This document shows, piece by piece, positions 5,525-64,000 of a stretch of 64,000 nt of DNA. The stretch comes from Macrostomum lignano. Taxonomy: Eukaryota. Position numbers and translations under genes: made by a program. The first letter of the stretch is position 1; every line of letters begins with the position of its first letter. Location of the stretch: NCBI GenBank assembly GCA_002269645.1, contig NIVC01003359.1:1-64000 (forward strand), written 5' to 3'. The notes under the pieces are model-generated. The model saw only the letters and a list, made by a program, of their open reading frames with translations. It did no database searches and was not told where the DNA came from.

Positions 5525-5664
5525 CACGCTTCCACTGCGATCTACTGCAGTGTGAACAATAAAGCTGCTTCAGTGGCAGTGCGTCAGTCGGCGTGATTGT
5601 CAGGCTCTACCGTCTCTTAGAAAGTTCAAGCTCAGCAGTCCAGTTGTGCTGGTGGATCGACACG

Positions 5665-8600
5665 ATGTCTTTCGATGCCAAACTACTGGTTGAGAAGTTG
5701 GATAGTTCCAACTACACTGTCTGGAAGTTCAAGATGAAGAACGTCCTGATGGAGCGAGAACTTTGGGAAGTTGTTGATGGTACAGAGACACTTGCTGAGG
5801 ACGCGACCAACGAGGTCAAAGTTCAGTTCAAGCGGCGTGCGAACAAAGCCCTAGCGACTATCGTATTGGCTGTTGCGGATAGTCAAATTCATCTAATTGA
5901 GGATGCAGAAACTCCGAAGGAAGCGTGGGATAAGCTTCAAGCATATTTCGAGCGGAGTTCGCTGGCAAATAAATTGTTTCTTAATCGGAAACTACAAGCG
6001 CTCAAGATGGTGGAAGGTGCATCCATGCAGGAGCATGTTAATCAGTTCAAGGATATCGTCAAACGACTGTCGGCTATCGGGGCAGGTGTTCCCGAGGACT
6101 ATCAAGTCACGATTCTGCTAAACAGTTTGCCGAAGTCATATGACGGGTTGATTACTGCCCTGGAATCGCGAGCGGACGACTTGACGATGAATTTCGTACT
6201 CGAGCGGCTTTTGCACGAGGAGTCAAAACGACTTGAACAGGAAAGCTGTGAACCTAGCAGCAATTCAAAGGCTCTGGTTGGATTCAAGAGGCAACAGCAC
6301 CAGAGTGTCAGACCAAAAGTATGTTTTTTCTGCAATAAGCCTGGTCACCTAAAGAAGCACTGTTACAAATTCAAGAATAGCCTCTCAGTGACAGGTGGAT
6401 CGAGCACAAATTCAAGACCACAGGATTTGAAGAAATCCAACAGAAGGCATCAGGCGAGGATTGCAGACGCCCCAGCAAATGACTTAAAGGACTTTTCAGC
6501 TTCAGATGAGGAAGATTCTGCATTTCCGGCGTTGTCTATGGGCACATCATCGACAGCTAACGAGTCTAGTACATGGATTGTGGACTCAGGCGCAACGAAT
6601 CACATGACTAATGATCGGACAAGTTTTGAGGAATTTGAAGATTTTTCGGTACTGGAGAACATTTCGCTAGCAGATGGACATAAGCTCGAAGCCACTGGAA
6701 AGGGAACCGTTCGGTTGTATATCAATACTGGTTCTGGTAAGAAATTGTGCGAGCTGAGCAACGTTCTATATGTACCACTTATGGAACAGAATTTGTTCTC
6801 AGTATCAGCAGTTACAAGAAAAGGCTTCCGTGTACAATTCAGCGACGACAAGTGTCAGATTTTGAGCGCAACTGGTAAGATTGTTGGAGAAGCTTTGAAA
6901 GTTGGCAGACTGTACAAATTGAAAGGCTTTAACCTAACTAACGAGACTGCATCTGTCGCGAGAAACAACAGCATCGACCTATGGCATCAGCGCTATGGAC
7001 ACCTAGGTGAGCAAGACCTGAAATCTCTAATTAATGGAAAGCAAGTGGACGGAATTGAGCTTAGCAAGGATGACGTAAAAACTGAAGGCATCAGTTTCTG
7101 CACAGCATGTGTGGAAGGAAAGCAACATCGAACGCCATTTGCAAAGGGTGAAGCGTCAAGGTCAACTGAACTATTGAGTCTAATTCACAGTGACGTGTGC
7201 GGTCCCATGAAAACTACGTCAATTGGAGGATCAAAGTATTTTGTCACATTTATTGACGACTATTCACGCTATTGCTCAGTTTACTTCATTAAAAGTAAGT
7301 CAGAAGTCTTAGAAAAATTCAAGATCTTTCAGGCTCTCGTCACGAATCAAACAGACAAGTCTATCAAGATTCTTCGGACTGACAATGGTGGAGAGTATAC
7401 ATCGGGAGAATTTGAGGCATTCTGTGCCCGAAACGGAATCATTCACCAGACTACAGTCCCACACTCTCCTGAACAGAACGGAGTAGCCGAGAGAATGAAC
7501 CGAACCTTGGTGGAGGCAGCACGAACAATGATTGCACATGCTCATATTGGCAAGGAATTCTGGGCAGAAGCAATCTCTACGGCAGCATATCTGCGTAATC
7601 GATCAATAACGAGTGCAGTCAACAAAGCGACACCATATCAAATTTGGACCGGCAGCAAGCCGAGTGTTCAGCATTTGCGAATATTTGGATGCGTTGCCTA
7701 CGCGCATGTCCCAGCTGAGAAACGTCACAAGTTTGACTCAAAAGCTCGGGAAGTCAGATTTATTGGATACTCGGAAACCTCAAAAGGATATCGTTGTTTT
7801 GATTTCCAAACACGATCAGTTTTCGTCAGTCGCGATGTAACGTTCCAAGAGTCGTGCTTCGTGAAGCAATTAGTGGAGAAGCAGGAGACACTTCAACTGA
7901 ATGCAGGTACCGAACCAGCATCGTCTGATTTCAAATGTGTTCCTGAAACTGTCGACAAGCAAGAAGTTCGGAGATCAACTCGAGAGAAGAAGCCCGTTGA
8001 CAGGTACGTGGCATCCGTCGCAACACAAATTGACGAACCGAAAACTCTACAGCAAGCATTGGACAGCTCATTCTCTAAAGACTGGCAAGAGGCTGCGAAC
8101 GCAGAGTACGAGTCACTGATGGAGAACAGGACATGGAAACTGGTTGAGCTACCAAAAGGACGTCAAACTATTGGCTGTAAGTGGGTATTTCGTGTCAAGT
8201 ATAAGGCAGACAACTCAGTAGACAGATTCAAAGCAAGATTGGTAGTCAAAGGATACTCTCAAGAGTATGGAGTAGATTATGAGGAGACGTATGCACCAGT
8301 AGCTCGATTTACATCAATTAGAACTCTACTGGCTGTTGGAGTTCAACGAGATTGGAAAATTCACCAGATGGATGTCGTAACAGCATTTTTAAATGGCAAA
8401 CTAGACGAAGAAATTTACATGGAACAACCGGAAGGATTTGTGGTTCAAGGCAAGGAAACACTAGTATGCAAACTAGAAAGAAGTCTATATGGACTCAAGC
8501 AGGCTCCTAGATGTTGGAATCAAACTCTGCATGATGAACTTTTAAGTCTTGACCTAGTGCAGGCAAAGTCAGAACCGTGTATCTATGCTAACTCTCAATC

Positions 8601-9558
8601 TGCGATCGGTGTGTATGTGGACGACATTCTATTAACAGCATCTGACGACTATATGCCCGTGCTGAAGCAAGAACTGCAATCTAAATTTAAGATGAAGGAT
8701 CTAGGTGAATTTCACTATTTTCTTGGAATTCAAGCTACCTGGAAGAATGGTTCATTGTTTCTAAACCAAGAGCGGTATCTAAATACCATCCTTTCTAAAT
8801 TCAACATGATGGACTGCAAACCGGTATCAACACCAATGGACGCAAGTGTCAAGTTCTACACTACACAGACCTGTGATGCTAAGGTGGACAAGACTATGTA
8901 TCAGGCGGCAGTAGGAAGTCTAAACTACGCAGCACTAGCTACACGACCAGATGTGTCATCTGCAGTGGGAGTTCTCGCGCGATATTGCTCAGACCCAACT
9001 GAACAGCATTGGAGTGGCGTGAAGCGTGTCCTGAGATACCTAAAGGGAACCATTTCATCAGGATTGGTTTTTCAGAAGGACTCGCGTGCAATCGATCTAA
9101 TTGGATATTCCGATGCAGACTGGGCTGGAGATCACAATGACCGACGTTCTACAACCGGATACATCTTCAAGTTGGCTGAATGTCCGATTAGCTGGAGTAG
9201 CAAGAAGCAACAAACTGTAGCTTTATCGACGACGGAGGCCGAGTACATGGCACTCTCAGCTGCTACCCAAGAAGCCACATGGTTACAACAGTTACTACTA
9301 GATCTTCGCGTAGAAAGTCTCAAATACGTTACTATCCTAGAAGACAATCAAGGCTGTATTGCTCTAGCTAGGAATCCTGTCTTCCACAGTCGTTCTAAGC
9401 ACATTGATATCCGTCACCATTTCGTGCGTGAGAAGTTGGTCGGCGGAACTTTAAAGCTAATTTACTGTCCGTCAGAGGAGATGATCGCTGACATTCTTAC
9501 TAAAGCACTGTCTAATGCTAAGTTTCAAGTGCTCAAGGAACTGATTCCTGTTCGTTAA
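5665..9558 (+). CDS. Copia gag-pol polyprotein (open frame begins at 5593; first ATG at 5665)
   Basis: Zn knuckle CFFCNKPGHLKKHC; protease WIVDSGATNHM; integrase HQRYGH..CTAC, DVCGP, TDNGGEY, QNGVAER, SKGY; RT QMDVVTAFLNG, YVDD; RNase H YSDADWAG, EAEY, EDNQG, KHIDIRHHF, ADILTK. No stops or frameshifts. Confidence 0.98.
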   Translation: MSFDAKLLVEKLDSSNYTVWKFKMKNVLMERELWEVVDGTETLAEDATNEVKVQFKRRANKALATIVLAVADSQIHLIEDAETPKEAWDKLQAYFERSSLANKLFLNRKLQALKMVEGASMQEHVNQFKDIVKRLSAIGAGVPEDYQVTILLNSLPKSYDGLITALESRADDLTMNFVLERLLHEESKRLEQESCEPSSNSKALVGFKRQQHQSVRPKVCFFCNKPGHLKKHCYKFKNSLSVTGGSSTNSRPQDLKKSNRRHQARIADAPANDLKDFSASDEEDSAFPALSMGTSSTANESSTWIVDSGATNHMTNDRTSFEEFEDFSVLENISLADGHKLEATGKGTVRLYINTGSGKKLCELSNVLYVPLMEQNLFSVSAVTRKGFRVQFSDDKCQILSATGKIVGEALKVGRLYKLKGFNLTNETASVARNNSIDLWHQRYGHLGEQDLKSLINGKQVDGIELSKDDVKTEGISFCTACVEGKQHRTPFAKGEASRSTELLSLIHSDVCGPMKTTSIGGSKYFVTFIDDYSRYCSVYFIKSKSEVLEKFKIFQALVTNQTDKSIKILRTDNGGEYTSGEFEAFCARNGIIHQTTVPHSPEQNGVAERMNRTLVEAARTMIAHAHIGKEFWAEAISTAAYLRNRSITSAVNKATPYQIWTGSKPSVQHLRIFGCVAYAHVPAEKRHKFDSKAREVRFIGYSETSKGYRCFDFQTRSVFVSRDVTFQESCFVKQLVEKQETLQLNAGTEPASSDFKCVPETVDKQEVRRSTREKKPVDRYVASVATQIDEPKTLQQALDSSFSKDWQEAANAEYESLMENRTWKLVELPKGRQTIGCKWVFRVKYKADNSVDRFKARLVVKGYSQEYGVDYEETYAPVARFTSIRTLLAVGVQRDWKIHQMDVVTAFLNGKLDEEIYMEQPEGFVVQGKETLVCKLERSLYGLKQAPRCWNQTLHDELLSLDLVQAKSEPCIYANSQSAIGVYVDDILLTASDDYMPVLKQELQSKFKMKDLGEFHYFLGIQATWKNGSLFLNQERYLNTILSKFNMMDCKPVSTPMDASVKFYTTQTCDAKVDKTMYQAAVGSLNYAALATRPDVSSAVGVLARYCSDPTEQHWSGVKRVLRYLKGTISSGLVFQKDSRAIDLIGYSDADWAGDHNDRRSTTGYIFKLAECPISWSSKKQQTVALSTTEAEYMALSAATQEATWLQQLLLDLRVESLKYVTILEDNQGCIALARNPVFHSRSKHIDIRHHFVREKLVGGTLKLIYCPSEEMIADILTKALSNAKFQVLKELIPVR

Positions 9559-9915: not shown

Positions 9916-10378
9916 GAAGGTGCACAGGGGAGAAGACAGGGAAGGCACAGGGGAGAAGACAAGGAAAGCACAGGAGGGAAGACGGAAAGCACAGAGGAGA
10001 AGACAGGGAAGGCACAGGGGAGAAGACAGGGAAAGCACAGGGGATATTGAAGACAGGGAAGGCACAGGGGAGAAGACAGGGAAAGCACAGGGGAGATTGA
10101 AGACAGGGAAGGCACAGGGGAGAAGACAGGGAAAGCACAGGGGATATTGAAGACAGGGAAGGCACAGGGAGAAGACAGGGAAGGCACAGGGGATATTGAA
10201 GACAGGGAAAGCACAGAGGAGAAGAGAGGAAAAGCACAAGGGAGAAGACAGGGAAGACACAGGGGAGAAGACAGGGAAAGCACAGGGGAGATTGAAGACA
10301 GGGAAGGCACAGAGAAGACAGGGAAGGTGCACAGTGGAGAAGACAGGAAAGGTACAGGGGAGAAGACAGGGAAGGCAC
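9916..10378. repeat. Minisatellite A, segment 2
   Basis: Same units resume after the TSD. Confidence 0.95.
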
Positions 10379-10620
10379 GCACGCGAAGGCGTATTCAGCA
10401 TGCCAGTGAAGTATGAGACAGACTAGGCCCATGGGCTAAGGTCTGCGATGCTTCACGCCTGCCCCTATCTTCAGCAGGTCAAGGCTGGTGGGAGGTCTGC
10501 ACCCTCTATTTGCCTCTGGCAGCCGCAGACCCCCCCCACGCTGTCTCGCAAGTCGACCCAGGGTACTCGTCCCCGCGTGTGTTCAAGGCAGTCCCTAGGG
10601 CTGCTGGACAGACTGGGCTC
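10379..10620 (+). ncRNA. Predicted HDV-like self-cleaving ribozyme at the 5' end of E1
   Basis: P1 GCACGCG(10379-85)/CGCGUGU(10574-80) with G1.U; P2 CCCA(10557-60)/UGGG(10614-17); P3 GGG(10561-63)/CCC(10571-73); L3 UACUCGU; J1/4 GU; P4 GGCAGUCC/GGGCUGCU; J4/2 CAGA with catalytic C10609. Confidence 0.8.
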
Positions 10621-10895
10621 CGGCGCTGGCGACCCTATCCAGTGGCTTCGGCCGAATTTGGGTATGCGGGTCTGGCTCGCCAACCTGCAGGCCGTGGTAC
10701 TGCTCAACGTACTCTCTAATGCCTAAGGTGTTGACCGTGCCGATGGGCTGGAAGGCCGGGGAGTAGTCCGGTCGCAAGCGGTCCCCCTCCTGGTGTCGGG
10801 CCAGCCTTGAGGGTGCTATTGGCCTACTGCCCGGTCAGGTGGAGCGGCCGGGTGGGTACCGCGCCCCTTTGAGGGTAGCCCACCAACCTTTTATC

Positions 10896-12399
10896 ATGGC
10901 CTTCGAGCCGACTATGGATAAACAAGCTATTTCTAGGGATGGGGACCCTTCTAAACCCCAACCTCAGTCCGAAGGACCGGCCGGCCCTGCTGGCAGATCC
11001 CAACCGACTGATTCAACTGTGGCAAAGGAAGGACCGGCTGGCTCTGCTGGCAGATCCGACCAGAGCTACCAAACTCAAAATACCCTAAGACCTGCCAGCT
11101 CCGCTGGTGGATCTAAGGGAACCGCGAGCTCTGAGCCTAAAGGACCGGCCAAATCTGGCAGATCCGATGAAGCTCAGCGGGCTCGGCTTGAGCGCAAACG
11201 CGCTAAACAACGCGCCAAAAGGCAGGCCAAGAAGGGAGCTGCGGGGGCCAAAGCGGCGGCGTCCACCATGGATGCTGAAGCGACTGGAGTCCCAAGGCAA
11301 CCAGGCGGGCCGGCCGGTGGAAGCTCCAGTAGTTCAGCGGCGGCGCTCCCTGGAGCTGCTGCCGCGGCTGCTGAGGCCGAAACCACGGCGCAACAAATGG
11401 CCACTGCCAACAAGGAGGTTCCTTCGGGAGCTACCTTTGCGGCGAAGGCCAAGGCCAAAATCCCGGGAGTGATCATCCAAGGTCGCGACCAGGACTGGAC
11501 CACTGATCAGCTTCAAAAAGTGTGGAGTGCTGTTGACTCCTATCTGATTGAGCTGACTGTCGAGGAGGGAATCTCCATCGGCGTTGAGCGGATGGTGCTG
11601 CGAAGCACATTCGTTCTTATTGCTCCTAGCAGCGAGGAGGACGCTCGGCGGCTGCTCCAGCGGCTACCGACGGTCTCCTTGGATGCTGACCTTGGCGGAG
11701 CTCTTTTTCTTCGCGAGGGCCAGCGTCCAAAGACGATACCCTATGTGGTTTTCGTCCCTGCTAAGAGCACCGCAGCTGGACCAGACGTTTTCGCCGGGTC
11801 CTACTGCGTCTGAACCCCGACCTCCCTGCTAGTGGACTGGTGTATCACCGTAAAGTCCGCAGGGGGGAGACGGGCAACTCAATTGTCCTCGGCCTTTCCA
11901 GCACTTGGGCGAGTCGGTACCCTAATGGATCCTCTTTCCAGCTGGGTGCCCTCAAGCTCAAGTTGCGCCGAGGAAAGTCTGCCAAAGGGAAGGCTACTGC
12001 CAACCCCGGCATCTCCGGCAAGAGCGGGGCGCAGTCTAAGGCCCAAGGAAAGGCGCAAGCCGATCCCAAAGCCAAAGCTGCATCTCGCCCCTCTGCTAGC
12101 AGCAGTTCGGCGACCGCGGTAACGGCTCCGGCCGAGCCCCGGGAACCAAACCTGCCAGTCGGAGAAGGAGTTGAGGACGAGGCCGGGTCTTCGGAATCCG
12201 AGCTCTCCTCGGCCACCTTGGTGGGGTCTGAAGGTAAAGATGCAGGTGAGGAAGCTTCCTCCATCCTGTCATCGGAGCCTGAGGAGTCTGCTGGGGGGCC
12301 GGTGGGGGTGAGGAGGCCATGGACGTCGACCAACTCCCATCTCCCAGTCAAGCCCCAGCGGCCTGGGACGAGGACGATCTGTTGTCCAAGTCTCCTTGA
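10896..12399 (+). CDS. E1 ORF1 (gag-like RNA-binding protein), inferred frameshifts at ~11790 and ~12305
   Basis: Joins ORFs 10839-11813 and 11840-12415. Core aligns with E2 ORF1 (FAAKAKAKIPGVIIQGRD / YADAAKRQPAVVILGKD; VLRLNPDLPASGLV-like / LAVNRELPAAGLV). The end at 12399 assumes a missing G at ~12305; otherwise it ends at 12415. Confidence 0.75.
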
Positions 12400-12438
12400 T
12401 GACCCTGGGCTCTAGCCAGATATTGCATTTAATACAGT

Positions 12439-15400
12439 ATGACTAAGCTCCACGCTGCCAAAGGAGCGACATTCTGTCTGCAAATAAATTTACAGCATTG
12501 CGTATCTGCGTCAGTAAATCTGATGAAGATTGCTGAGCTGTACAGGCCAGGCCTCATCCTGATCCAGGAACCCTGGATGCGCAACGGTAAGTTGCCCAAC
12601 ATTCCCTCTGGCTACTCTGATTTTTATGTGTGTGGCCCGGGGAACAGCCGCCCTAGAGCGGCTATCCTCGCTGCTAGCCATCTCCAGGCTTGGCTGAGGA
12701 CTGATCTCTCTGATGGAGACCTTTGCGTCATCCAATCTAATCATTTCTCTCCGCGTACGTGTCTTGTTGCCTCGGTTTATATCCCAGGCGACAGAGACCC
12801 TGCTCCGAGAGTTTACTGCGCCTTGCGCAGTACTGCGAGTCCCAGAACGCTGAGCTGTGCTTAGGGGGCGACCTCAACGCGCACCACAAGCACTGGGGCA
12901 GCAAAGATACCAACACTAGAGGAGAGGAGCTTCTGGCCCTCATCTCTAACACAAACCTCATGCTCTGCAACCGCGGCAGCACTCCTACCTTTAATAATGG
13001 CAGATGGACCGAGGTCCTCGACGCCACACTCGTTACCCCAAGACTCTTTGACAGAGTCAAGGAGTGGAGAGTCTGGTCTGAGGAGCCCTCCCTGTCTGAC
13101 CACTGCTTTATCGCCTTTAATATCGCGGACACTAAAACCCAGTCTCCGATCACTTGGAGACGCAATATCCGCAACACTGATTGGGCGGCCTACAAGGCTG
13201 CCCTTGATCTGCACCTGCAGGAACTCACGGACTTACGTCCGATTGAGACCTGCGAGGATGTGGATCATATGGCTGAGACGCTGACAGGTTGCATTATTGC
13301 AGCCTACGAAGCGGCTTGTCCTGCTCGCGCCTACAGAGGCAAGACCTCGGCGCCGTGGTGGAACCCGGAGCTGGGGAAACTCAGGCGGAAGGCCAAAAGC
13401 CTTCATCGCCGTGCCATGAAGACCGGAAACCCGGAGGACATGGAGCTTTTCCGGCAAGCCTCCCGCAATTTCAAATCTGAAGTGCGCAAGGCCAAGGAAT
13501 GTAAGTGGCGCCAATTCTGCAATGAATTGGATCAAGACAGACCTACTTCTAGGCTTGTCAAGGCCCTTACAATGGACAAAATGTCCAAATTAGCCATGAT
13601 CAAAAAAGATGATGGCTCTCTTACTAAAGACCCTGAAGAAGTGCTTCAGCATATGCTTAGCACATTCTTCCCGAGGGTACCTACTGCTAGACCGGAGCCC
13701 AACCATTCGATGGATGGAGCCACCCTAGCGGCGGGCATTGTCACTGAAGACCTAATCGCTCGTGCGGTCAGAACCTTCAAACCCTTCAAATCTCCTGGAC
13801 CTGATGGTATCTACCCTGTTCTCCTTCGTGAAGCAGCCAAGATACCCTCGTTCCTGAGACTCACCCGCAATCTTATGCGGGCCTCTATCCAGCTGGGATA
13901 CGTTCCCAAAAGCTGGACTGAAGCTCGAGTAGTCTTTATTCCCAAACCTGGGAAGGGTGACTACCAAAGCGTCAAGGCCTTCCGGCCAATTAGCTTAACG
14001 TCAGCAATGCTTAAGCTCACTGAGAGGCTTATTCTCTGGCGGCTGCTCTCCTGCGAGCTGACAGCGATGCCCCTCAGCAATAATCAGCACGCCTTCCGTA
14101 CCGGGAGGTCGACTGACAGCGCCCTGCATGCGATTGTCGAAAAGATTGAACGGGCGGTACTGGGTGACGGTTACGCCCTGGCTCTCTTTCTTGACATTGT
14201 TGGCGCCTTCGACAACGTTATCTTTGAAGCGTTTCAGAGGGCCCTTCAAAATCGCAAAGCTCATGCTACCCTCATACGGTGGATCATGTACATGATCTCC
14301 AACCGTACGGTCACTGCCCAACTTCTTGGGCAAACTGCCTCCACCAGAGTCTGTAAGGGTGGACCCCAAGGCGGAGTCCTCACCCCGACGCTCTGGAACC
14401 TGGTCATGGACGCTCTTCTGAGTGACTCCCGACCTGACCCCGTCTTCAAAGTCGGGTATGCTGATGACGTCACGGCCATTGTGGCAGGACCGTCTCCCAG
14501 CACGCTCAGGGATCTGATGCAGAGCTTTATCCGCAAAGCAGAATCCTGGGCCAATGACAATGGTTTGGAACTCTCTGAGCCCAAAACCGTTGCCATTATG
14601 TTTACCAGCAGACTACGCTGGAACATACGTCCTCTGCAGCTCTACGGCAGAGATATTGCCTTCGCGCACCAGACCAGATGTCTCGGGGTCACACTTGACC
14701 ACCGGCTCAACTGGTCCTTCCACGTGAAAGCAAAAGCTAAGCGTGCCTCAGCCATCCTGGCCCAGCTCCGACGAGCACTTGGCACTTCTTGGGGTCTATC
14801 CCCAAAGCGGCTTTGGTGGATCTATACTTCCGTAGTTAGACCTGCCATTACGTACGCCTCTGTTGTCTGGGTTAGCGCTACCCAGGTCAAAAGCCATGCA
14901 GACCTGCTCAACACGATCCAAGGCAGAGCGTGTAGGCTCATCTGCAACGCCACCAGGTCCACGCCCTTTGCTGGCATGGGGGCCTTTCTTAATCTTCCGC
15001 CTCTTGACCTCTTCATCAGGGGTGAGGCGGCTAGAACGACGCGGCGTCTAATTGATGCCGGCGTCAAATTCATTTACATGAGAGCACCTGCTAAGCGGAA
15101 CCTTGTCCCGCATAGCGATCTGTGCCTCAACTTTCTCAACGAGTGTCAGGCCAATCGCGTCTTCACCGATGGCATTGCCTCAACGCTCAACCTGAGACAG
15201 CGCTACTCCGTAGCTATCGACTCGCGCGATAACATCAATGACCATTGGAACCCTGGTGAGCTTCATTGCTACACCGACGGTTCTAAGCAGTCAGCCAACA
15301 CCGGCTTTGGTGTTGGAATCTTTCTGAACGGGAGGGTCATCGCTACCCACGCTCAATACACTGGGGTCAACTCCAGTGTTTTCCAAAATGAAGTTCTGGC

Positions 15401-16178
15401 CATCAGCTCCTGCACTGCAGAGCTTCTCGCCACTGGCGTTACTGGTAAGAACATCATTTTCCATTCGGACAGCCAAGCTGCCTTGCACGCCATCAGTGGC
15501 TGCAGCACCAACTCTGCTACAGTCCTTGACTGTATCAAACTCCTCAATGTGTTGGGTTCCGCCAACAAAATTACCCTTAAGTGGGTTCCGGGGCATGTGG
15601 GGATCCGAGGAAATGAGTTGGCTGACACCCTTGCAAAAGTTGGTGCCTCCGGCTCCTCTCTCGGCCCCGAACCTCTTGTCCCGATTCCTGGCTGTGTCAT
15701 CGACTCGCGCATCAAAGCGTGGATCAGGACTCAGCACCGCTCGACTTGGGCGAACCGCACGAACTGCAGGCAATCCAGAGGCGCTGTCCCTCAGCCCTCT
15801 CACCAGCTCCGGAAGCTCCTCTTGCGCCTCTCGCGCAGAGACATCCGGGCTGCCACCATGACCCTCTCTGGTCACGGCTGCTTCTCCAGGCACCAGTACC
15901 TGCAGGGCAACGCCACCAACGCCACCTGTAGTTTCTGCAACTCAGGTGACGAAACCGCTGAGCATTTCGTCAGCATCTGTCCCGCCTTCACGCGGGCCAG
16001 ACTCACTTACCTCGGGCCACACACATCTATTACTGAAGCGTGCAAACCCGAAAACTTTAATCAGCTCATGCGCTACCTTCGGGCCACCCGCAGGGCTGAA
16101 CTCTCCTTTCCAGAGAGCACCATAGCTGCTGGCGACACTGGGGGACCTCCCTGGGCGGCGCCAACCCTCCGTCCATAG
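12439..16178 (+). CDS. E1 ORF2: AP endonuclease, reverse transcriptase, RNase H, C-terminal CCHC; one frameshift at ~12808
   Basis: LQINLQH, LIQEPW, GGDLNAHH, SDH (APE); KSPGPDG, FRPISL, LDIVGAFD, PQGGVLTP, YADD (RT); YTDGS, NEVLAI, SDSQA, WVPGHVGIRGNELAD (RNase H); CSFC..ETAEHF..C. Confidence 0.95.
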
Positions 16179-16278
16179 CGACGCGTCGGCCGTTCAGGGA
16201 CTAGCGGAATGGGCGCCCGCGCCTTCCCGCTGTGTCCCCTCCGGGACAGCCCTGCAGCTAAGTCAAGTTAAGTCAAGT

Positions 16279-16737
16279 CAGGGAAGGCACAGGGGAGAAG
16301 ACAGGGAAAGCACAGGGGATATTGAAGACAGGGAAGGCACAGGGGAGAAGACAGGGAAGGCACAGGGGAGAAGACAGGGGAGAAGACAGGGAAGGCACAG
16401 GGGAGATTGAAGACAGGGAAAGCACAGGGGATATTGAAGACAGGGAAAGCACAGGGGAGATTGAAGACAGGGAAGGCACAGGGGAGATTGAAGACAGGGA
16501 AGGCACAGGGGAGAAGACAGGGAAAGCACAGGCGAGATTAAAGACAGAAAAAGCACAGGGGCGAAGACAGGGAAAGCACAGGGGATATTGAAGACAGGGA
16601 AGGCACAGGGGAGAAGACAGGGAAAGCACAGGGGATATTGAAGACAGGGAAGGCACAGGGGAGAAGACAGGGAAAGCACAGGGGAGATTGAAGACAGGGA
16701 AGGCACAGGGGAGAAGACAGGGAAAGCACAGGGAAGA
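16279..16737. repeat. Minisatellite A, segment 3
   Basis: Same units resume after the LINE tail. Confidence 0.95.
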
Positions 16738-17299: not shown

Positions 17300-17795
17300 A
17301 ATCAATAAGCAAATCAACAAATCAATCACTCAATCAACCAACCAATCAACAAATCAACCAACCAATCAACAAATCAATCACCCAATCAACCAATTAATCA
17401 ACCAATCAACACTCAATCAACCAACCAATCAACAATTCAATCACCCAATCAACCAACCAGTCACCCAATCAATCACTCAATCAACCAATCAATCACCCAA
17501 TCAATAACCAAATCAACAAATCAATCACTCAATCAACCAACCAATCAACCAATCAATCACTCAATCAACCAACCAATCAACCAATCAATCACTCAATCAA
17601 CCAACCAATCAACCAATCAATCACTCAATCAACCAACCAATCAACCAATCAATCACTCAATCAACCAATCAACCAATCAATCAACCAATCAATCACTCAA
17701 TCAACCAATCAACCAACCAATCAACAAATCAATCAACTAATCAATCACCAAATCAACCAATCAATAACCCAATCACCTAATCAATCAACCAACCA
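17300..17795. repeat. (AATC/AACC)n compound microsatellite
   Basis: Direct reading. Confidence 0.9.
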
Positions 17796-17831
17796 ACTAA
17801 AAGCTAATAAATCAGTGGAACAATTAACTAA

Positions 17832-37469: not shown

Positions 37470-38058
37470 CCTGATTACTGACTCAGTCTACCTGGTTACT
37501 GACTGATTACTGACTCAGTCTACCTGATTACTGACTCAATCTACCTGGTTACTGACTGATTACTGACTCAGTCTACCTGATTACTGACTCAATCTACCTG
37601 ATTACTGACTCAGTCTACCTGGTTACTGACTGATTACTGACTCAGTCTACCTGATTACTGACTCAATATACCTGATTACTGACTCAGTCTACCTGGTTAC
37701 TGACTGATTACTGACTCAGTCTACCTGGTTACTGACTGATTACTGACTCAGTCTACCTGATTACTGACTCAATCTACCTGATTATCGACTCAGTCTACCT
37801 GGTTACTGACTCAGTCTACCTGGTTACTGACTGATTACTGACTCAGTCTACCTGATTAGGGACTCAGTCTACCTGATTACTGACTCAGTCTACCTGATTA
37901 GGGACTCAGTCTACCTGATTACTGACTCAGTCTACCTGATTACTGACTCAGTCTACCTGATTAGGGACTTAGTCTACCTGGTTACTGACTCAGTCTACCT
38001 GATTAGGGACTCAGTCTACCTGGTTACTGACCGATTACTGACTCAGTCTACCTGATTA
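37470..38058. repeat. 21-bp minisatellite (TACTGACTCAGTCTACCTGAT)n with 29-bp variants
   Basis: Direct reading. Confidence 0.95.
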
Positions 38059-58038: not shown

Positions 58039-58250
58039 GCCCCAGGACCCCGGGTCCTGCACGTAAGAACTACAGTATGAGACTGGTATGGCCTTTATCC
58101 CAGCCAGCGATGCTCACACCTGCCTCCCCTGGCGGGCTGATAGCTCAAGAGACTCTGTCTCCTGATTTTCACCTTGCAAGGCGCACTTCGAAGGGTACTC
58201 GTCCCGTGGGTGTTAAGGCAGGCCCCCTTGGGCCCTGCCGAGCTGATTCG
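58039..58250 (+). ncRNA. Predicted HDV-like self-cleaving ribozyme at the 5' end of E2
   Basis: P2 CGAA(58189-92)/UUCG(58247-50); P3 GGG/CCC; L3 UACUCGU(58196-202); J1/4 GU; P4 GGCAGG../..CCUGCC; J4/2 CUGA (C58243). P1 GCCC(CA)(58039-44)/GUGGGU(58206-11) is imperfect as assembled. Confidence 0.65.
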
Positions 58251-58486
58251 TTGGCGCCGGGTCCTGGTGTGACCATAAACGCACCCTCTAATGTCCCAGT
58301 GTAACTCCGTGCTGATGGACGCTTGGCCAGGGAGTAGTCTGGTCGCTAACGGTTCCCCTTGCGCTTTTGGGTCCCCCCGCAGGGTGGTATTTTGCTTTTT
58401 GGGGGCCTGCCGCTTGGTTTGGGGTTGCGGCCTTGCGGCTCTTTGCCTGTGTTCTGCAGGAAGTCCCACCTTTTTACTTCCAGCCA

Positions 58487-60005
58487 ATGGCTTCTAACCG
58501 AAGTAACAAACCGGCTGTGGATGACACAGTGCCTCCGGCCTCGGCTGGGGCCGTGGACTCCTCGGCCATACCACCTGCTACCATCGGGGACGCCTCGGCG
58601 AGACCCGTGGAGCCAACTCTGAGCGGTGCCTCCGAGAAGACACCTGCTACTCCAGCTGCTAAGAAACGCAGCACCACCTCTGGAGCTGCCCGCCGTCGAC
58701 TTAACAAGGCGAGGCGGGCCAAGGAGGGCGGAAGCCAAACCGGTGCCAGGGGCCAACGGCCCGCGGCAGCGGAAGCTTCCCAGTCTGGGCGGTGGCGGAA
58801 GAGGGCCTCGAGCCCACGGAAGCCCCTGCCCAGGATAGGGAGGCCGATGCAGCCGGGAGGGTGGACAGCCCACCTGAAGAAAGCTCCACTGACCCCCGGG
58901 CCTCCTACGCTGATGCGGCAAAGAGGCAACCGGCGGTTGTCATCCTGGGAAAGGACGCGCGCCTGTCTCCCGATCAGCTGAAGCAGGTGAGAAGTGCCGT
59001 TGATGGCCTCCTGTGGAAGCAAACTCTGAAGGGCACGCCTCTGAACATTCATTCGAATGCGACGAGGGACTCGTGCCTTCTCATTTGGCCCAGTGATGCT
59101 GACTCGGGTCGGCGGCTCCTTGAGCTGCTGCCCGAGCAGAGCTGGGACCTCAACCTAGCCTTCTGCAGAGAGGACGAGCGCCCCCGGACCAAGAGGCATC
59201 GAATCTGGGTCCCGGCCAGGAGCGTTGTTACCTCTGCTGACGAGCTCCGGAAAGGACTGCTAGCAGTCAACCGGGAGCTTCCCGCCGCGGGCCTAGTGGT
59301 GCATGACACCCTTAAGCGCACCGACGGCACTGGCTTCACAGCCATCCTGGGGCTGTCGGACGCCTGGATGAGGCGTTATCCACACGGCAGCTTCATCAAC
59401 GTCGGCCTTTGGAAGCTGCGCATCCGCTCCTACGAGGCCGACCCTCCCCGTGGCAGTGAGCAGGGCGGGCGGGATGCGGAGGCGGCCGGGGCCGAGGCGC
59501 AAGCCTCTGCTCAGACTGCCAAAGCAAACCGCCCTGCCCGGCAGCACGGCCGCGCGGGCAAAGCTGAGCGCGCTGCTGAGGGCGGAGGCGACCGACGCCC
59601 GGCGCGTAGCACCAAGCGGCGCGGCCTGTACCAGCGTGCAGCTGAGGCAGTCCGTACCGCCAAAATCTCCAGCTGAGGCGAGAGGTCGCCGGGACGCCTA
59701 GGCGCACCAGTTCGTCCAGGGAGGGTGGGGACGTCCCAGCTGGGCCCAACCCCTCGGGGCAGGGCCGACTGGAGACGGACCCGCCTGCCCAGGCGGCTGG
59801 CTGCTCCAGGGCATTGGGCCAATCTGAGGCGGAGGACCCCATGGATGGTGGGCAAAGGGCGGCGAACGCTGCCTACTGCCTTCCGGCCAATCGGGGGCCT
59901 TTTGCTGAAGAAGAGCCCATGGACACCGGCGACCCCGACCCGAAGCCGGTGAGCGCCGAGGAGGAGGAGGAACTCCTGGCGGCTGCAACATCCGATCTGC
60001 AATGA
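58487..60005 (+). CDS. E2 ORF1, inferred frameshifts at ~58790 and ~59650
   Basis: MASNRSNK.. (frame of 58367) to AEEGLEP..RIWVPARS.. (58792-59676), then an open frame 59646-60005 ending EEEEELLAAATSDLQ*. Confidence 0.7.
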
Positions 60006-63000
60006 TGCCAACGACTACCTGGTGTCTGCAGATCAACACCCAGCACTGCGTGGCGGCGTCGGTCAACCTGATGCGCACGGCAGAGCAACAGCTTCCGGGC
60101 CTGGTCTTCGTACAGGAGCCCTGGATGACTAAAGGTAAGCCAAATAATGTGCCATCTGGCTACCACTGTTTTTGCATGGCGGGCTCTCAGCCTCGCCCAA
60201 GATCTCTGGTCTTTGCTGCAAAAGCTTTTGAGGCATGGATGAGACCTGATCTCTCGACTGGGGACATCTGTGTTGTTCAAATCAATAACCTCATTCCCAA
60301 TAAACCTGTGCTGGTAGCTTCTGCCTATTTCCCGGGCGATGCCCCAGTTGTCTGCGACGCGTTAGTCAACCTTACTGACTATGCTGCGTCCCATCGGTTC
60401 GAGCTGCTCATTGCAGGGGATGTGAACGCACACCACCTGCATTGGGGCAGCAAGAACATCAATAGCAGAGGCGAGGAGCTGCTGGCCTATGTCAGCAGCA
60501 CTAACCTCAACTTCTGTAACGTGGGCAATGCACCAACGTTCAATAATGGGCGGTGGGCCGAAGTCATCGACACCACCATCGCCTCACCCGGACTGCTTTC
60601 CGCAGTTACGGGCTGGCGAGTGTGGGACGAGGACTCGCTCTCGGACCACCGCTTTATCCGCTTTTGCATTGGGCCGACCAAGCAAAAGCCTAAGGTCACT
60701 TGGAGTCGGAACGTCAGGAACACCGATTGGGCCGCCTTTGGCTCGAAGCTGAGCCGCGGCCTTCGGGATCTTGACCCCCCCAGTGACCTCTCTGACTGCC
60801 AGGTGGTGGACGATCTCGCCTCCTCCCTGGGCGGGGCGATCACCACTGCCTTTGAAGCAGCCTGCCCCTAAAGGCCTATAAAGGCAAAAAATCTGCTCCC
60901 TGGTGGAACCCAGAGCTCGGGGCCCTTCGGCGCCGAGCCAGGACCCTCCAAAGGCGAGCGCTCAAAACCAAAGACCCATCTGACAGAGAGGCCTATACCC
61001 GTGCGATCCACGAGTTTAAGGGCCAAGTCAGAAGGGCCAAGACGGCCAAGTGGCGCCAATATTGCGAAGGGCTTGAGGGCTCTCGCCCCGTAGCCCGCGT
61101 GGTTAAGGCACTCACTAATGACCGTTTTTCTAAACTCTCTGTTGTGAAGAGACCTGACGGCTCGGTCACAGAGAGTTCGGAAGAGACTCTAGAGCTCATG
61201 CTCAACAGTTTTTTCCCTAAATCTCCGACTCAGCAGGGCCCGCCCGACCACACAGTGGGAGGGCAAGGCCTAGCAAAGTCTATGATCACCAAAGACCGCA
61301 TTATTAGAGCGGCAAGGTCCTTTAACCCGTTCAAGGCGCCTGGGCCCGACGGCATCTACCCAGCGTTCTTGCACGAGGCGGTGAAAAACCACCGCTTCCT
61401 GGACCTGCTCTGTCGTCTCCTTCGAGCTTGTATGGAGCTGGGCTATGTACCAGTTGCATGGAGAGAGGCCCGGGTGGTCTTTATCCCCAAGCCTGGAAAG
61501 AGCGACTACCAATCGGTGAAGGCCTTCAGGCCTATCAGCCTCACTTCTTTCTGCCTCAAGCTCCTCGAGAGACTGGTGCTTTGGCGCCTACTTTCGGTCG
61601 AGCTGAAGCGCTTCCCACTCTCGCAGAACCAGCACGCCTTCCGCGCGGGCAGGTCAACCGAGAGTGCTCTCCATGTCATTGTTGACTTCCTGGAGAGGGC
61701 CGTTCTTGGCAGCGGCTTTGCCCTCTCGCTTTTCCTGGACATTGAGGGGGCCTTCGACAACGTCATCTTCGAGGCCTTTTGCAGAGCCCTGGAATCCAGG
61801 GCCACGCACCCTCACCTTGTCCGGTGGATCATGTTCATGATCCGAAACCGCACTGTTGTGGCCCACCTGAGCGGCAGCTCTCTTTCGGTGCCTGTCCTGA
61901 AAGGGGGCCCCCAGGGCGGCGTTCTCACCCCCGTTCTCTGGAACATGGTCATGGATGAGTTGCTTTGCAGTGATCTCCACGACCCCATTCTCAAGGTGGG
62001 CTATGCCGATGATGTGACCGCGATATGCGCGGGCCCCTCGGTTGATACCATCAGAGACCTTCTGCAGGGCTTTCTGGGACGAGCGGAGCGTTGGGCAGAC
62101 CAATGTGGCCTTAGACTCTCAGAGTCGAAAACCACAGCAGTCATGTTTACCAACAAACTGCTCTGGACCATTAAGCCCCTCACCCTCTATGGAAAGAATA
62201 TTTCCATGGAGAAGCAGGTCCGCTGCCTGGGCCTCACTCTGGACCACAGGCTTAACTGGACTCCGCACATTCAAACTAAAGCCAAAAAAGCCCTGGCTGT
62301 ACTGGCTCAGATCAGGCGCGCCGTGGGCACCACCTGGGGGCTCACCCCCAGGAAGCTGTGGTGGATTTACACTGCCATCATCCGCCCCTCGATCAGTTAC
62401 GCCAGCCTCGTGTGGGCTAGCGGCCTGAGCGTCAAGAGCAACCTCGACGCTCTCTACAAAATCCAGGGCAGAGCCTGCCGCATGACTATGGGCGCTCCAC
62501 CCTCTACTCCTTTTGAAGGCATGAATGCCTTCCTCTGCGCCCCTCCTTTGGATATTTATATCAAAGGAGAGGCGGCGAAGAGCACCCGGCGTCTTCTGGA
62601 TGCTGGGGTGGCCTTCAAGAAAGTGCGGGCCTTTAAGAAGCGGTCGCTTATCCCGCACTCTGACCTCTGCCTCAAGGCTCTCGAGGAGTGTGGCGGGCTC
62701 AACATCCTCACGGACTCGATCCCAGCCACCCTTCTCCTGAGCCAAAGGTATAAGGTCACCATTCAGCCTCGACACGAGGCGAGTGACAGCTGGAGCGACT
62801 CTGAAGTCCACTGTTACACTGACGGCTCTATGAGGCATGGTCTTTCAGGCTTCGGAGCTTGCGTCTTCTTCAAGGGAGAAGTGGTGTGGAGCTACTCCCA
62901 GCACACTGGGCTCAACTCCAGTGTTTTTCAGAGCGAGGTGCTTGCCATCAGCTCCTGCGCGGCAGAGCTGCGCCGAAGGCAGCTTAGCGGCCGGAAATTT

Positions 63001-63705
63001 ATTTTTCACTCTGACAGCCAAGCAGCCCTTCGGGCCCTCTGCCGCAGCACCGCCAGCTCCAGGTCCGTCCTGGACTGCAACACCCAGCTCAACGGGCTTG
63101 CGCTAGGCAACCAGGTGGAGCTCAGATGGATCCCGGGCCACGCCGGCTTCCTCGGCAACGAGCGCGCTGACCTGCTGGCCAAGGCTGGCTCCGCCGGCGC
63201 GCTATTGGGGCCGGGCCCGGGTGCCCCCATCCCCGCCTCGGTGATCAATTCCCGCGTTAAGCGCTGGGCTGACTCCGAGCATCTCCGCAGGTGGCACGAC
63301 ACCCGGAATTGTAGGCAATCCCGTGCTGCCGTCCCCTGTCCCTCTCCTCTCCTGCGTAGAGCCCTCCTCAGGCTCAACCGCAGAGACCTCAGAGCAGTTA
63401 GCATGGCCCTCTCCGGGCATGGCTGCTTCTCTCGCCACCGCTTCCTTCAGGGCCAAGTACCCGAGGAGCGGTGCCCCTTCTGCCGCTCAGGCAGTGAAAA
63501 CGCCGAGCATTTTATCTGCCACTGCCCGGTTTTCACCAGGGCCAGGCTTACTCACCTCGGGCCAAACCCGGTTCTCTCCGACGTTTGCAGGCCCGAGAGC
63601 ATCCCACTGCTCGCCCGGTACCTCAGGGACACCGGACGAGCTGATTTCTTCCCCACCGTCGGTGAGGAGGACCGCGCTGCAGGCGAGACCGACGGGTCCC
63701 CCTGA
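60002..63705 (+). CDS. E2 ORF2: AP endonuclease, RT, RNase H, CCHC; one frameshift at ~60868 (CCCC run)
   Basis: LQINTQH, VQEPW, AGDVNAHH, SDH; KAPGPDG, FRPISL, PQGGVLTP, YADD; YTDGS, SEVLAI, SDSQA, WIPGHAGFLGNERAD; CPFC..ENAEHF..C. Confidence 0.95.
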
Positions 63706-64000
63706 GCGACACCACTTCAACGGAAGTCGTTGGTCGCCAGGGGCTAGCGGAATGGGCGGTCTCCTCCGCCTCCTCGCTGCATCCGCCGGACGCCCCCTGC
63801 AGCTAAGTCAAGTCAAGTTATGATGCTGTCCCTCTATTCGCCTCTTGCTGTAATAGTCATTTCGCAGTTGCTAATATTTTTACGTTGAATTACATTTTCA
63901 TAGCTTTTTGACGTACGAGTATAAATTTGGTGCAGCCAAAGAGCCTCAAAGCGTCAGGACTTATTCGGAAGCTTGAGCATCTCTCTAAACCTGGAGGCCG

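What the first reader, a model, noticed from the sequence alone, without database searches (positions are those of the whole stretch)
10379..10620. HDV-like ribozyme starts exactly at the first base of LINE E1, with an atypical L3
Seen in sequence: all elements of the nested double pseudoknot appear in order. These are a 7-bp P1 opened by G1.U, a ~170-nt J1/2, P2, a 3-bp P3, L3 UACUCGU, J1/4 GU, P4 and J4/2 C-A-G-A. G1 coincides with the junction to the minisatellite. Established: HDV-like ribozymes release the 5' ends of R2, RTE, SART and Baggins elements. Unusual here: L3 position 2 is A rather than C/U, with a compensating U in J1/4 (P1.1 = A-U plus C-G). A search descriptor requiring UYCNCG, or a short J1/2, would miss it. 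Inference: the element can be transcribed by read-through and self-release.
Basis: partly seen in the sequence, partly recalled or inferred. Interest (0 to 1): 0.85.

Follow-up and report, generated by a model that had tools for sequence, protein, structure and literature searches.

The report
HDV-like ribozyme heading a flatworm LINE
The first 239 bases of a LINE retrotransposon in this flatworm-like genome fold as a hepatitis-delta-type self-cutting RNA whose cut site is the element's first base; relatives support the fold, but this is a known way for such elements to trim their RNA, so it is a solid yet ordinary find.

Summary
G10379 is the first base after an 11-nt target-site duplication in the minisatellite.

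- A decayed second copy in the window (E2, 58059-58250) has the same L3 and J1/4, with compensatory changes in P2.
- A Logan contig (L001) and eight metagenome loci (five lineages in all) of the same LINE group carry the same architecture.
- Over nine sequences, 99% of helix cells pair, and 23 of 24 pairs show changes on both sides. This includes both P1.1 pairs (A-U/C-G in E1 and E2, C-G/U-A or C-G/C-G elsewhere).
- The first J4/2 base is always C.
- In four lineages, homology between copies, or the duplication, stops at the first base of P1 (within one base in one of them).

With P1 anchored at base 1, 2 of 20,000 shuffles meet the descriptor.

Weak points:
- Rfam gives no hit for E1.
- A covariance model built without E1 and E2 ranks E2 first in the window but does not list E1.
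- E1's P2 is only 4-5 bp.
- Cleavage is untested.

The 171-nt J1/2 and an A-U pair in P1.1 are variations on known themes. Verdict: a new member of a known kind, of moderate interest.

The parts
10368..10378 (+). Left copy of the 11-nt target-site duplication AGGGAAGGCAC, inside the minisatellite
   Evidence: Identical 11-mer at 16280-16290. Inside a 23-bp periodic array, a phase shift of the array cannot be fully excluded.
10379..16279 (+). LINE E1. It holds a 5'UTR with the ribozyme, ORF1 (ATG 10896), ORF2 (endonuclease, reverse transcriptase, RNase H, C-terminal Cys/His motif), a 3'UTR and an (AAGTC/AAGTT)n tail. ORF1 has a frameshift near 11768-11813 and ORF2 one near 12807-12813.
   Evidence: Pfam domains; tblastn with the L001 ORFs; sequence ends.
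10379..10385 (+). P1 5' strand GCACGCG. The predicted cleavage is 5' of G10379.
   Evidence: Pairs with 10574-10580 over 7 bp including G.U. P1 covaries in relatives: 6 of 7 pairs show changes on both sides.
10386..10556 (+). J1/2 peripheral domain, 171 nt and structured
   Evidence: It is homologous in E2 and L001. The GUAU...AUGC hairpin and two more hairpins show compensatory changes. The CGAUGC and GCAAGYC motifs are read, with only near-matches in E2 (GCAAGGC) and L018 (UGAUGC). The MFE fold gives a multi-hairpin domain.
10557..10560 (+). P2 5' strand CCCA (or CCCAG if G10561 is included)
   Evidence: Pairs with 10614-10617. E2 has CGAA/UUCG at the same place, with two pairs changed on both sides.
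10561..10563 (+). P3 5' strand GGG
   Evidence: Pairs with CCC 10571-10573. Relatives have ACC/GGU or GCC/GGC.
10564..10570 (+). L3 UACUCGU. U10564 and C10568 G10569 sit at the conserved active-site positions. A10565 and C10566 form P1.1.
   Evidence: Identical in E2. Relatives have UCUCCGU, UCUACGU, GCCUCGU, GCCACGU and UCCACGUU.
10571..10573 (+). P3 3' strand CCC
10574..10580 (+). P1 3' strand CGCGUGU
10581..10582 (+). J1/4 GU, the partner of L3 positions 3 and 2 (P1.1)
   Evidence: Both P1.1 pairs covary across nine sequences.
10583..10608 (+). P4 hairpin: an A-rich entry UCAA, then the stem GGCAG(U)CC / GGCUGCU
   Evidence: It is in the MFE fold. The basal 5 bp covary in relatives.
10609..10613 (+). 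J4/2 CAGAC. C10609 is the candidate catalytic cytosine.
   Evidence: The first J4/2 base is C in all nine sequences (invariant column C78 of A10).
10614..10617 (+). P2 3' strand UGGG
16280..16290 (+). Right copy of the target-site duplication
58059..58250 (+). Ribozyme of the decayed second copy, E2. P1 is GCACGU/GUGGGU with one AxG mismatch. P2 is CGAA/UUCG, P3 GGG/CCC, L3 UACUCGU, J1/4 GU, J4/2 CUGA.
   Evidence: Sequence. The E1 model R1 scores it 33.1 bits, E 1e-5 to 2e-6. It is the best window hit of model R3, which was built without E1 and E2 (15.3 bits, E 0.063).
58059..63818 (+). LINE E2, about 64% nucleotide identity to E1 in ORF2. ORF2 has a frameshift near 60856-60892, and ORF1 is not open from its ATG at about 58487. 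Its 5' limit is uncertain and could be 58029.
   Evidence: blastn; tblastn; 3' end.

Best explanation
The first 239 nt of LINE E1 (10379-10617) encode a large HDV-like self-cleaving ribozyme. It is a nested double pseudoknot (P1, P1.1, P2, P3, P4) with a 171-nt structured insert in J1/2.

Proposed mechanism, all inferred:
- When the element is transcribed from upstream, or from any start 5' of G10379, the RNA folds.
- C10609 in J4/2, together with the L3 pocket (U10564, C10568, G10569), catalyses attack of the 2'-OH of the upstream nucleotide.
- The transcript is cut just 5' of G10379.
- This leaves an element RNA with a 5'-OH that starts at its own first base, so new full-length copies start at that base.

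Shown here: the fold, its conservation and covariation in relatives, and the coincidence of G1 with 5' ends of elements.

Inferred: catalysis, its rate in this copy, and any extra role in translation or protein binding.

E1 has frameshifts in both ORFs, so it is a relic or a non-autonomous copy of an element type that works this way. The frameshifts could also be errors of the assembly.
For: 1. All elements are in the right order at the stated coordinates.
2. G10379 is the first base after an 11-nt duplication.
3. The anchored shuffle null gives 2 of 20,000. In the whole window, the descriptor finds only E1, E2 and one AU-rich site.
4. E2 keeps L3, J1/4, P3 and P4, changes two P2 pairs on both sides, and has CUGA in J4/2.
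5. L001 shares 57% amino-acid identity with E1 in ORF2. It has P1 GCCUGC/GCAGGC at contig bases 1-6, and L3 UCUCCGU with J1/4 AG. The block GUAUGAGA starts at element position 33, as in E1.
6. L018/L059, L015, L022, L045, L003/L019 and L024/L025 have the same architecture.
7. On the nine-sequence alignment, 99.0% of 197 cells pair. Shuffles give 59.0 +/- 2.8% and slid partners 33-44%. 23 of 24 pairs show a change on both sides, both P1.1 pairs among them.
8. The first J4/2 base is an invariant C.
9. Different flanks meet exactly at the first base of P1 in L024 vs L025 and in L018 vs L022 vs L045. In L003 vs L019 the shared sequence starts one G before P1.
10. The compact relative L024 54-174 gets its only ribozyme-type Rfam matches from two HDV-like families, both starting at base 54 (RF02682, 25.7 bits; RF01787, 20.4 bits).
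11. J1/2 loops of 216-498 nt in active R2 ribozymes, and cleavage at the 5' end of R4, Dong, Baggins and L1Tc, are documented (PMC3774820). Structured J1/2 domains activate large HDV-like ribozymes (PMC4908430).
Against: - No Rfam family reaches even E<=10 on 10200-10900.
- Model R2, built from four subfamily-B cores, finds L003 but none of E1, E2 and L001.
- Model R3, built from seven relatives with the P1 3' strand masked, ranks E2 first but only at E 0.063, and does not list E1.
- E1 differs from every relative in J4/2 (CAGAC against CU[GA]N) and has the shortest P2 (4-5 bp).
- I built the covariation alignment by hand around the structure. For L003 and L024 I chose which P2 segments to pair, and I dropped 1-4 nt linkers between P2 and P3.
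- In this copy the flank repeats GCAC, which creates an alternative 6-bp P1 register (10375-10380 with 10575-10580). That register could compete.
- The MFE z-score of the whole region is only -1.38.
- E2's P1 has a mismatch, and 30 unexplained GC-rich bases lie upstream of its G1.
- No cleavage data exist.
Confidence: 0.8

Rival explanations
1. The fold is real and inherited, but this copy is catalytically dead or very slow. In that case 10379-10617 is a relic of a ribozyme, or is kept for another role.
For: E1 has frameshifts in both ORFs, so there has been no recent selection on this copy. P2 is only 4-5 bp, and J4/2 departs from all relatives. E1 is not listed by the leave-out model R3. An alternative P1 register is created by the flank. 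Relative L045 shows that dead-looking variants exist (L3 GCCUAGU), and in R2 changes at these conserved L3 sites go with no activity (PMC3774820).
Against: P1 is a perfect 7 bp. P3, L3 U..CG, both P1.1 pairs and C10609 are intact. A at the second J4/2 position is what HDV itself has (own knowledge).
Confidence: 0.15
2. The 5' end is set by an internal promoter that starts transcription at G1. The conserved pseudoknot would then serve translation initiation or binding of the element's protein rather than RNA release.
For: In L1Tc the same first 77 nt are both promoter and ribozyme (PMC3383444). R2 ribozymes are proposed to act as IRES and to bind R2 protein (PMC6765202). The 5'UTR downstream of the ribozyme and the J1/2 motifs are also conserved, which suggests functions beyond cleavage.
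Against: This does not explain why the active-site C of J4/2 and the L3 CG are kept across lineages that share only 30-38% ORF2 identity with L001, nor why P1 must begin exactly at base 1. The two roles are not exclusive.
Confidence: 0.1
3. Chance complementarity in a GC-rich 5'UTR, read as a ribozyme.
For: A loose descriptor gives as many hits on the minus strands as on the plus strands of the relatives (32 against 31 cores in 478 kb). The MFE z-score is only -1.38. There is no Rfam hit.
Against: The anchored null gives 2 of 20,000. The same architecture with compensatory changes is present in eight other sequences. The E1 model hits E2 at E about 1e-5.
Confidence: 0.02

Closest known systems
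5'-terminal HDV-like ribozymes of non-LTR retrotransposons that cut at the element's own 5' end (R4, Dong, Baggins1, L1Tc; also Drosophila R2)
   Same: A nested double pseudoknot sits at the very start of the element, and the cut site is its first base. The cut releases element RNA from a longer transcript (PMC3774820, PMC3185411). Like L1Tc, E1 encodes an AP endonuclease, a reverse transcriptase and RNase H (PMC6765202).
   Different: The host is a flatworm (Macrostomum-like), where the paper library searched holds no such report. The LINE clade was not determined. P1.1 is A-U plus C-G. The J1/2 insert carries motifs shared with relatives from metagenomes. E1 is not site-specific: E1 and E2 sit in unrelated targets.
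R2 ribozymes with very long J1/2 loops (silkmoths, 216-498 nt) and large HDV-like ribozymes with a P1.2 peripheral domain (drz-Agam-2 type)
   Same: A long structured J1/2 lies between P1 and P2. In subfamily B a closing helix next to P1/P2 covaries (CCAUG/CAUGG against CCGUGG/CCACGG), like the P1.2 'pinch' of PMC4908430.
   Different: In E1's own subfamily no closing helix is established. The MFE fold uses GCGA/UCGC, which overlaps P1. R2 J1/2 loops show little sequence identity between species (PMC3774820), whereas here short motifs persist between subfamilies.
Rfam RF02682 (HDV ribozyme from Faecalibacterium prausnitzii) and RF01787 (drz-agam-1)
   Same: The RF02682 consensus core UCUaCGU ... 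AG ... GCAAC ... GG CUAAGA matches L018, L022 and L024 almost base for base. It already contains a U-A pair in P1.1 (alignment).
   Different: Only sub-threshold scores, and only for the compact relative L024 (25.7 against 44 bits; 20.4 against 37). E1 gives no match. In E1 the A-U pair is at the other P1.1 position.

Membership tests
HDV-like self-cleaving ribozymes (fold class) | Strand order: P1 5', J1/2, P2 5', P3 5', L3, P3 3', P1 3', J1/4, P4, J4/2, P2 3', forming a nested double pseudoknot | tested here: met
   Coordinates read. On nine sequences, 99% of cells pair and 23 of 24 pairs show compensatory change (hand-built alignment).
HDV-like self-cleaving ribozymes (fold class) | P1.1: L3 positions 2 and 3 pair with the two J1/4 bases | tested here: met
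   A10565-U10582 and C10566-G10581. Pair types across relatives are CG:7 and AU:2, and CG:6 and UA:3.
HDV-like self-cleaving ribozymes (fold class) | Catalytic cytosine as the first base of J4/2 | tested here: met
   C10609. The column is invariant in all nine sequences.
HDV-like self-cleaving ribozymes (fold class) | L3 active-site bases: U at position 1 and CG at positions 5-6 | tested here: met
   E1 and E2 have UACUCGU. Some relatives start L3 with G, and L045 has AG in place of CG.
HDV-like self-cleaving ribozymes (fold class) | Cleavage immediately 5' of the first P1 base, usually a G in a G.U or G-C pair | not testable with these tools
   The position is consistent: G10379.U10580 is the first element base, and flanks of relatives diverge at or within one base of G1. 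The chemistry is not assayed.
HDV-like self-cleaving ribozymes (fold class) | Mg2+-dependent self-scission that depends on the J4/2 cytosine | not testable with these tools
   Needs an in vitro transcription and cleavage assay.
Rfam HDV-like families (RF00094, RF00622, RF01787, RF01788, RF02682 and others) | Covariance-model score at or above the family's gathering threshold | tested here: not met
   No match for E1 even at E<=10. Relative L024 scores 25.7 bits against 44 (RF02682) and 20.4 against 37 (RF01787). These models describe compact ribozymes and cannot span a 171-nt J1/2. So E1 is not filed under any one Rfam family, only under the fold class.
LINE 5'-end-processing ribozymes (R2/R4/Baggins/L1Tc type) | The ribozyme occupies the first bases of a non-LTR element, and its cut site equals the 5' junction | tested here: met
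   The duplication places the junction at 10378/10379. ORF2 has endonuclease, reverse transcriptase and RNase H domains. The same coincidence holds in L024/L025 and L018/L022/L045, and within one base in L003/L019.
Family of this window's own ribozyme, tested with models built here | Recognition of E1 by a covariance model built only from relatives | tested here: not met
   R2 and R3 do not list E1 at E<=10. R3 ranks E2 first in the window (15.3 bits, E 0.063). E1 and E2 are linked by R1 (33.1 bits). The seeds were few and hand-padded with N, so the test has low power.
Other self-cleaving ribozyme classes (hammerhead, twister, hairpin, pistol, hatchet and others) | Match to the Rfam model of the class | tested here: not met
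   No such hit in the window at gathering thresholds, nor in 10200-10900 at E<=10.

The most novel reading that the evidence does not exclude
The 125-250-nt J1/2 insert may be more than a tolerated loop. It could be a conserved functional module that defines a distinct, widespread subclass of large HDV-like ribozymes in one LINE group of aquatic animals. Possible roles are a folding 'pinch', a binding site for the element's own protein, or a translation element.

What points that way:
- The CGAUGC and G(G/C)AAG(U/C)C motifs are shared, with near-matches in E2 and L018.
- The hairpins covary within each subfamily.
- A closing helix next to P1/P2 is seen in L018, L022, L045 and L003.

In this reading, P1.1 is free to swap which of its two pairs is A-U.
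Probability: 0.25. Interest if true: 0.55.

Novelty: new member of a known kind. Interest (0 to 1): 0.4.

Why it matters
It adds a free-living flatworm LINE family, plus five metagenomic or Logan lineages of the same LINE group, to the elements that appear to trim their own 5' ends with an HDV-like ribozyme.

It gives natural covariation at both P1.1 pairs, including an A-U pair at the outer position.

It also shows concretely why Rfam models and short-J1/2 descriptors under-count such ribozymes. For annotating Macrostomum repeats, it gives a precise marker for full-length 5' ends.

It does not change how these ribozymes or elements are thought to work.

Tried and rejected
- **Rfam.** The whole window at gathering thresholds and 10200-10900 at E<=10 gave no HDV-like hit, only chance-level matches.
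- **ORF1-based protein searches.** These gave 2 hits and 1 hit, none with a usable contig.
- **Exact-pattern scan of metagenome contigs** for the J1/2 block CCCANGGGCTAAGGTCTNCGATGC: nothing found.
- **P0003 contig:** DNA not available.
- **Loose descriptor:** 31 cores on plus strands against 32 on minus strands in 478 kb, so it is unspecific and I dropped it as evidence.
- **Single-sequence model R1:** finds only E1 and E2, even with filters off.
- **MAFFT alignment of cores:** not faithful to the structure. I therefore used equal-length composites with N padding.
- **Leave-out models R2 and R3:** they do not list E1.
- **GCUCAC at 58112 as E2's P1**: rejected, because it lies in a conserved J1/2 block, and the homologous GCACGU at 58059 pairs at 5 of 6 positions.
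- **UCCC/GGGA as L024's P2**: rejected in favour of CUCC/GGAG after the CUAAAU J4/2, by analogy with relatives and with the Rfam alignment.
- **Relatives L005, L036, L013 and L009:** no HDV-like core seen by eye.
- **LINE clade:** not determined. The DUF4780 literature search was uninformative.

Full report
**What is there.** The window is most like Macrostomum lignano. ORF1 and ORF2 fragments match UniRef proteins of that flatworm at 95-97% identity.

E1 (10379-16279) is a non-LTR element. Its parts are:
- a 517-nt 5'UTR;
- ORF1, starting at ATG 10896;
- ORF2 with Exo_endo_phos, RVT_1 and RNase_H domains;
- a short 3'UTR;
- an (AAGTC/AAGTT)n tail.

E1 sits inside a 23/50-bp minisatellite that continues on both sides. 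AGGGAAGGCAC is present at 10368-10378 and again at 16280-16290, directly after the tail. So the first element base is G10379, which is also the first base that departs from the repeat unit. ORF1 is frameshifted near 11768-11813 and ORF2 near 12807-12813. These may be real frameshifts or assembly errors.

| Element | Coordinates | Sequence |
|---|---|---|
| P1 | 10379-10385 with 10574-10580 | GCACGCG / CGCGUGU, 7 bp, G.U at the cut site |
| J1/2 | 10386-10556 | 171 nt |
| P2 | 10557-10560 with 10614-10617 | CCCA / UGGG |
| P3 | 10561-10563 with 10571-10573 | GGG / CCC |
| L3 | 10564-10570 | UACUCGU |
| J1/4 | 10581-10582 | GU |
| P4 | 10583-10608 | hairpin |
| J4/2 | from C10609 | CAGA(C) |

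The only blemish is the register at the P2/P3 border. With a 3-bp P3, J4/2 is 5 nt and P2 is 4 bp. If G10561 pairs with C10613 instead, P2 is 5 bp and P3 is 2 bp.

**Chance.**
- A descriptor of the canonical features found, on both strands of the 64-kb window, only E1, E2 and one AU-rich site at 53651. The features were: 3-bp P3; L3 with U at position 1 and CG at positions 5-6; two P1.1 pairs; P1 of 6-7 bp starting with G; P2 of at least 4 bp preceded by a J4/2 that starts with C.
- With P1 tied to base 1 of the 5'UTR, 2 of 20,000 dinucleotide shuffles passed. 5 passed with L3 position 1 free, and 93 without the CG requirement.
- I wrote the descriptor after seeing E1, so these numbers flatter it somewhat.
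- A looser descriptor is useless: it gives 31 cores on plus strands and 32 on minus strands of the relatives.
- Folding energy alone is unremarkable (z = -1.38).

**Relatives.** A second, more decayed copy in the window, E2, ends at 63818 with the same 3'UTR and tail.
- Its 5'UTR carries GGGUACUCGUCCC, with the same L3 and the same J1/4 GU.
- Its P4 has indels.
- Its J4/2 is CUGA.
- Its P2 is CGAA/UUCG where E1 has CCCA/UGGG, so two pairs are changed on both sides.
- A model made from E1 alone scores it 33.1 bits (E about 1e-5 to 2e-6).
- At the position homologous to E1's start it has GCACGU against GUGGGU: five pairs and one AxG mismatch.
- Two of the base differences from E1 in these strands are C-to-U changes at CpG sites, as expected in an old copy.

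ORF2 homologues led to L001, a 6.5-kb Logan contig with intact ORFs and 57% amino-acid identity.
- The contig begins at its base 1 with GCCUGC, which pairs with GCAGGC right after P3 (GGG/CCC).
- L3 is UCUCCGU, J1/4 is AG, P2 is CUCAGA/UCUGAG and J4/2 is CUGC.
- The conserved block GUAUGAGA starts at element position 33 in both E1 and L001.

A scan of metagenome contigs with an ORF2 alignment gave 80 more loci at 26-38% identity. Among them:
- L018/L059, L015, L022 and L045 form a sister subfamily. P1 is G7/C7, J1/2 is 105-133 nt, P3 is ACC/GGU, L3 is UCUACGU with AG or GCCUCGU with GG, and J4/2 is CUGA or CUAAAC.
- L003/L019 have P1 GGGCGCG/CGCGCCC, L3 GCCACGU and J1/4 GG.
- L024/L025 are a compact form with a 10-nt J1/2.

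**5' ends.** Where two copies with different flanks are available, homology starts at the first base of P1.
- L024 and L025: exact.
- L018, L022 and L045: exact at the start of the G run.
- L003 and L019: one extra shared G.

Together with the duplication in E1, that makes four lineages in which an independently located 5' end coincides with the predicted cut site, within one base in L003/L019. L001 and L015 start at or near it at a contig end, which is weaker evidence.

**Covariation.** MAFFT would not keep the helices in register. So I joined the helix segments of the nine distinct sequences into equal-length composites. These have artificial AT anchors, and N where a position is absent. I then counted pairs.
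- 99.0% of 197 cells form standard pairs. Shuffles give 59.0 +/- 2.8% (0 of 500 reach the observed value), and partners slid by 1-3 columns give 33-44%.
- 23 of 24 pairs have a change on both sides.
- By helix: P1 has 6 of 7 pairs with compensatory change, P2 7 of 7, P3 3 of 3, P1.1 2 of 2 and P4 5 of 5.
- P1.1 has three states that all pair: A-U plus C-G in E1 and E2; C-G plus U-A in L001, L018 and L015; C-G plus C-G in the rest.
- The first J4/2 base is C in all nine.

Two caveats apply. The alignment is fitted by hand. In L003, L022, L045 and L024 I dropped 1-4 nt linkers between P2 and P3, and in L003 and L024 I also chose which P2 segments pair. The P3, L3, P1 3' strand and J1/4 block is contiguous and needed no such choice. 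The P1 5' strand was placed at the start of the shared element sequence (for L001 and L015 the contig start, for E2 the site homologous to E1's start), so P1 and P1.1 are the least biased helices.

**Model-based tests, mostly negative for E1.**
- Rfam has no hit in the window, nor in 10200-10900 at E<=10.
- The compact relative L024 gets sub-threshold matches to two HDV-like families, both beginning at base 54, its first base: RF02682 at 25.7 bits and RF01787 at 20.4 bits.
- The RF02682 consensus (UCUaCGU ... AG ... GCAAC ... GG CUAAGA) is nearly the L018/L022 core. It already has a U-A pair in P1.1.
- Model R2, from four subfamily-B cores, finds L003 (E 0.0025) but none of E1, E2 and L001.
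- Model R3, from seven relatives with the P1 3' strand masked, ranks E2 first in the whole window in the right register. The score is only 15.3 bits (E 0.063), and E1 is not listed.
- E1 is the outlier of the set: J4/2 is CAGAC, GGA follows P4, and P2 is 4 bp.

**J1/2.** The insert is homologous across the group.
- Reading the spans, CGAUGC and G(G/C)AAG(U/C)C recur in most sequences. E2 has GCAAGGC and L018 has UGAUGC.
- Within E1, E2 and L001, three hairpins show compensatory changes, including GUAU...AUGC.
- In the sister subfamily, a helix next to P1 and P2 covaries (CCAUG/CAUGG against CCGUGG/CCACGG). L003 has CCAUAGC/GCUAUGG at the same place.

This resembles the activating P1.2 domain described for large HDV-like ribozymes (PMC4908430). 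Active R2 ribozymes tolerate J1/2 loops of 216-498 nt (PMC3774820).

**Mechanism and comparison.** The best reading is a 5'-terminal HDV-like ribozyme that cuts read-through or upstream-initiated transcripts just 5' of G10379. The RNA, and hence new copies, would then start at the element's own first base. This is established for Drosophila R2, R4, Dong, Baggins and L1Tc (PMC3774820, PMC3185411, PMC6765202).

- Shown here: the fold, its conservation, and the coincidence of the predicted cut site with 5' ends.
- Inferred: catalysis, the activity of this copy, and any role in translation or protein binding.

That RTE and SART elements also carry such ribozymes rests on my memory of Ruminski et al. 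2011, which the library does not hold. The paper library holds no report of such a ribozyme in Macrostomum or in non-R2 flatworm LINEs. In Schistosoma, non-LTR elements were linked to twister variants instead (PMC8501958).

**Verdict.** This is a new member of a known kind, with a mildly unusual P1.1 and a conserved large J1/2. Interest is moderate.

Noticed in passing
window 5593-9558 (+): An intact 1321-aa Ty1/copia-type gag-pol ORF (gag, GAG-pre-integrase, integrase core, RVT_2) lies just upstream of the minisatellite and on the same strand as E1. Transcription reading out of it could in principle run into E1.
   Followed up: partly
window 9922-10378 and 16280-16737: One 23/50-bp minisatellite (unit GCACAGGGGAGAAGACAGGGAAG) is split by E1. 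The flank ends in GCAC and E1 starts with GCAC. This creates an alternative 6-bp P1 register (10375-10380 with 10575-10580).
   Followed up: partly
window 10688-10893; 58278-58391; L001 391-589: The 5'UTR between the ribozyme and the ORF1 start is also conserved among E1, E2 and L001 (for example GGGAGTAGTCYGGTCGC). Its function is unknown; it could be a translation element or a protein-binding site.
   Followed up: no
window 10623-10628; 58254-58259; L001 242-247; L018 2870-2875: A GGCGCC palindrome (GGCGCT in E1) lies 3-5 nt after the 3' strand of P2 in E2, L001 and L018, which belong to two subfamilies.
   Followed up: no
window 58029-58058: Thirty GC-rich, partly palindromic bases lie between a possible 6-bp duplication (ATGCTG at 58023-58028 and 63822-63827) and G58059 of E2. 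They could be untemplated or transduced 5' sequence, or simply flank. If transduced, that copy came from an uncleaved RNA.
   Followed up: partly
window 16196-16279; 63742-63818; L001 5886-5965: E1, E2 and L001 share a 3'UTR stem (AGCGGAATGGGCG ... CCGCT, then CCCTGCAGCT) and an (AAGTC/AAGTT)n tail. This is a likely recognition site for the reverse transcriptase.
   Followed up: no
window 17312-17797: A tandem array of AATCAACC-type units (periods 8, 12, 20 and 32).
   Followed up: no
window 57346-57502: A run of N (assembly gap) about 560 bp upstream of E2.
   Followed up: no
window 20600-21800 (-) and 37500-37850 (+): Weak hairpin hits of models R2 and R3 recur at regular spacing, which points to further tandem repeats. 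GC skew is strongly negative over 20-24 kb.
   Followed up: no
L005 1-200; L036 150-300; L013 2320-2420; L009 1-130: Another subfamily of the same LINE group has a conserved 5'UTR (GACGATGTGTTAGCCGTGCATCGCGACC) but no HDV-like core that I could see. The ribozyme may be absent, or too different to recognise by eye.
   Followed up: partly
L045 7511-7703: This copy has L3 GCCUAGU, with A in place of the conserved C of the CG, while P1 is a perfect G7/C7. It is a likely inactive variant.
   Followed up: no
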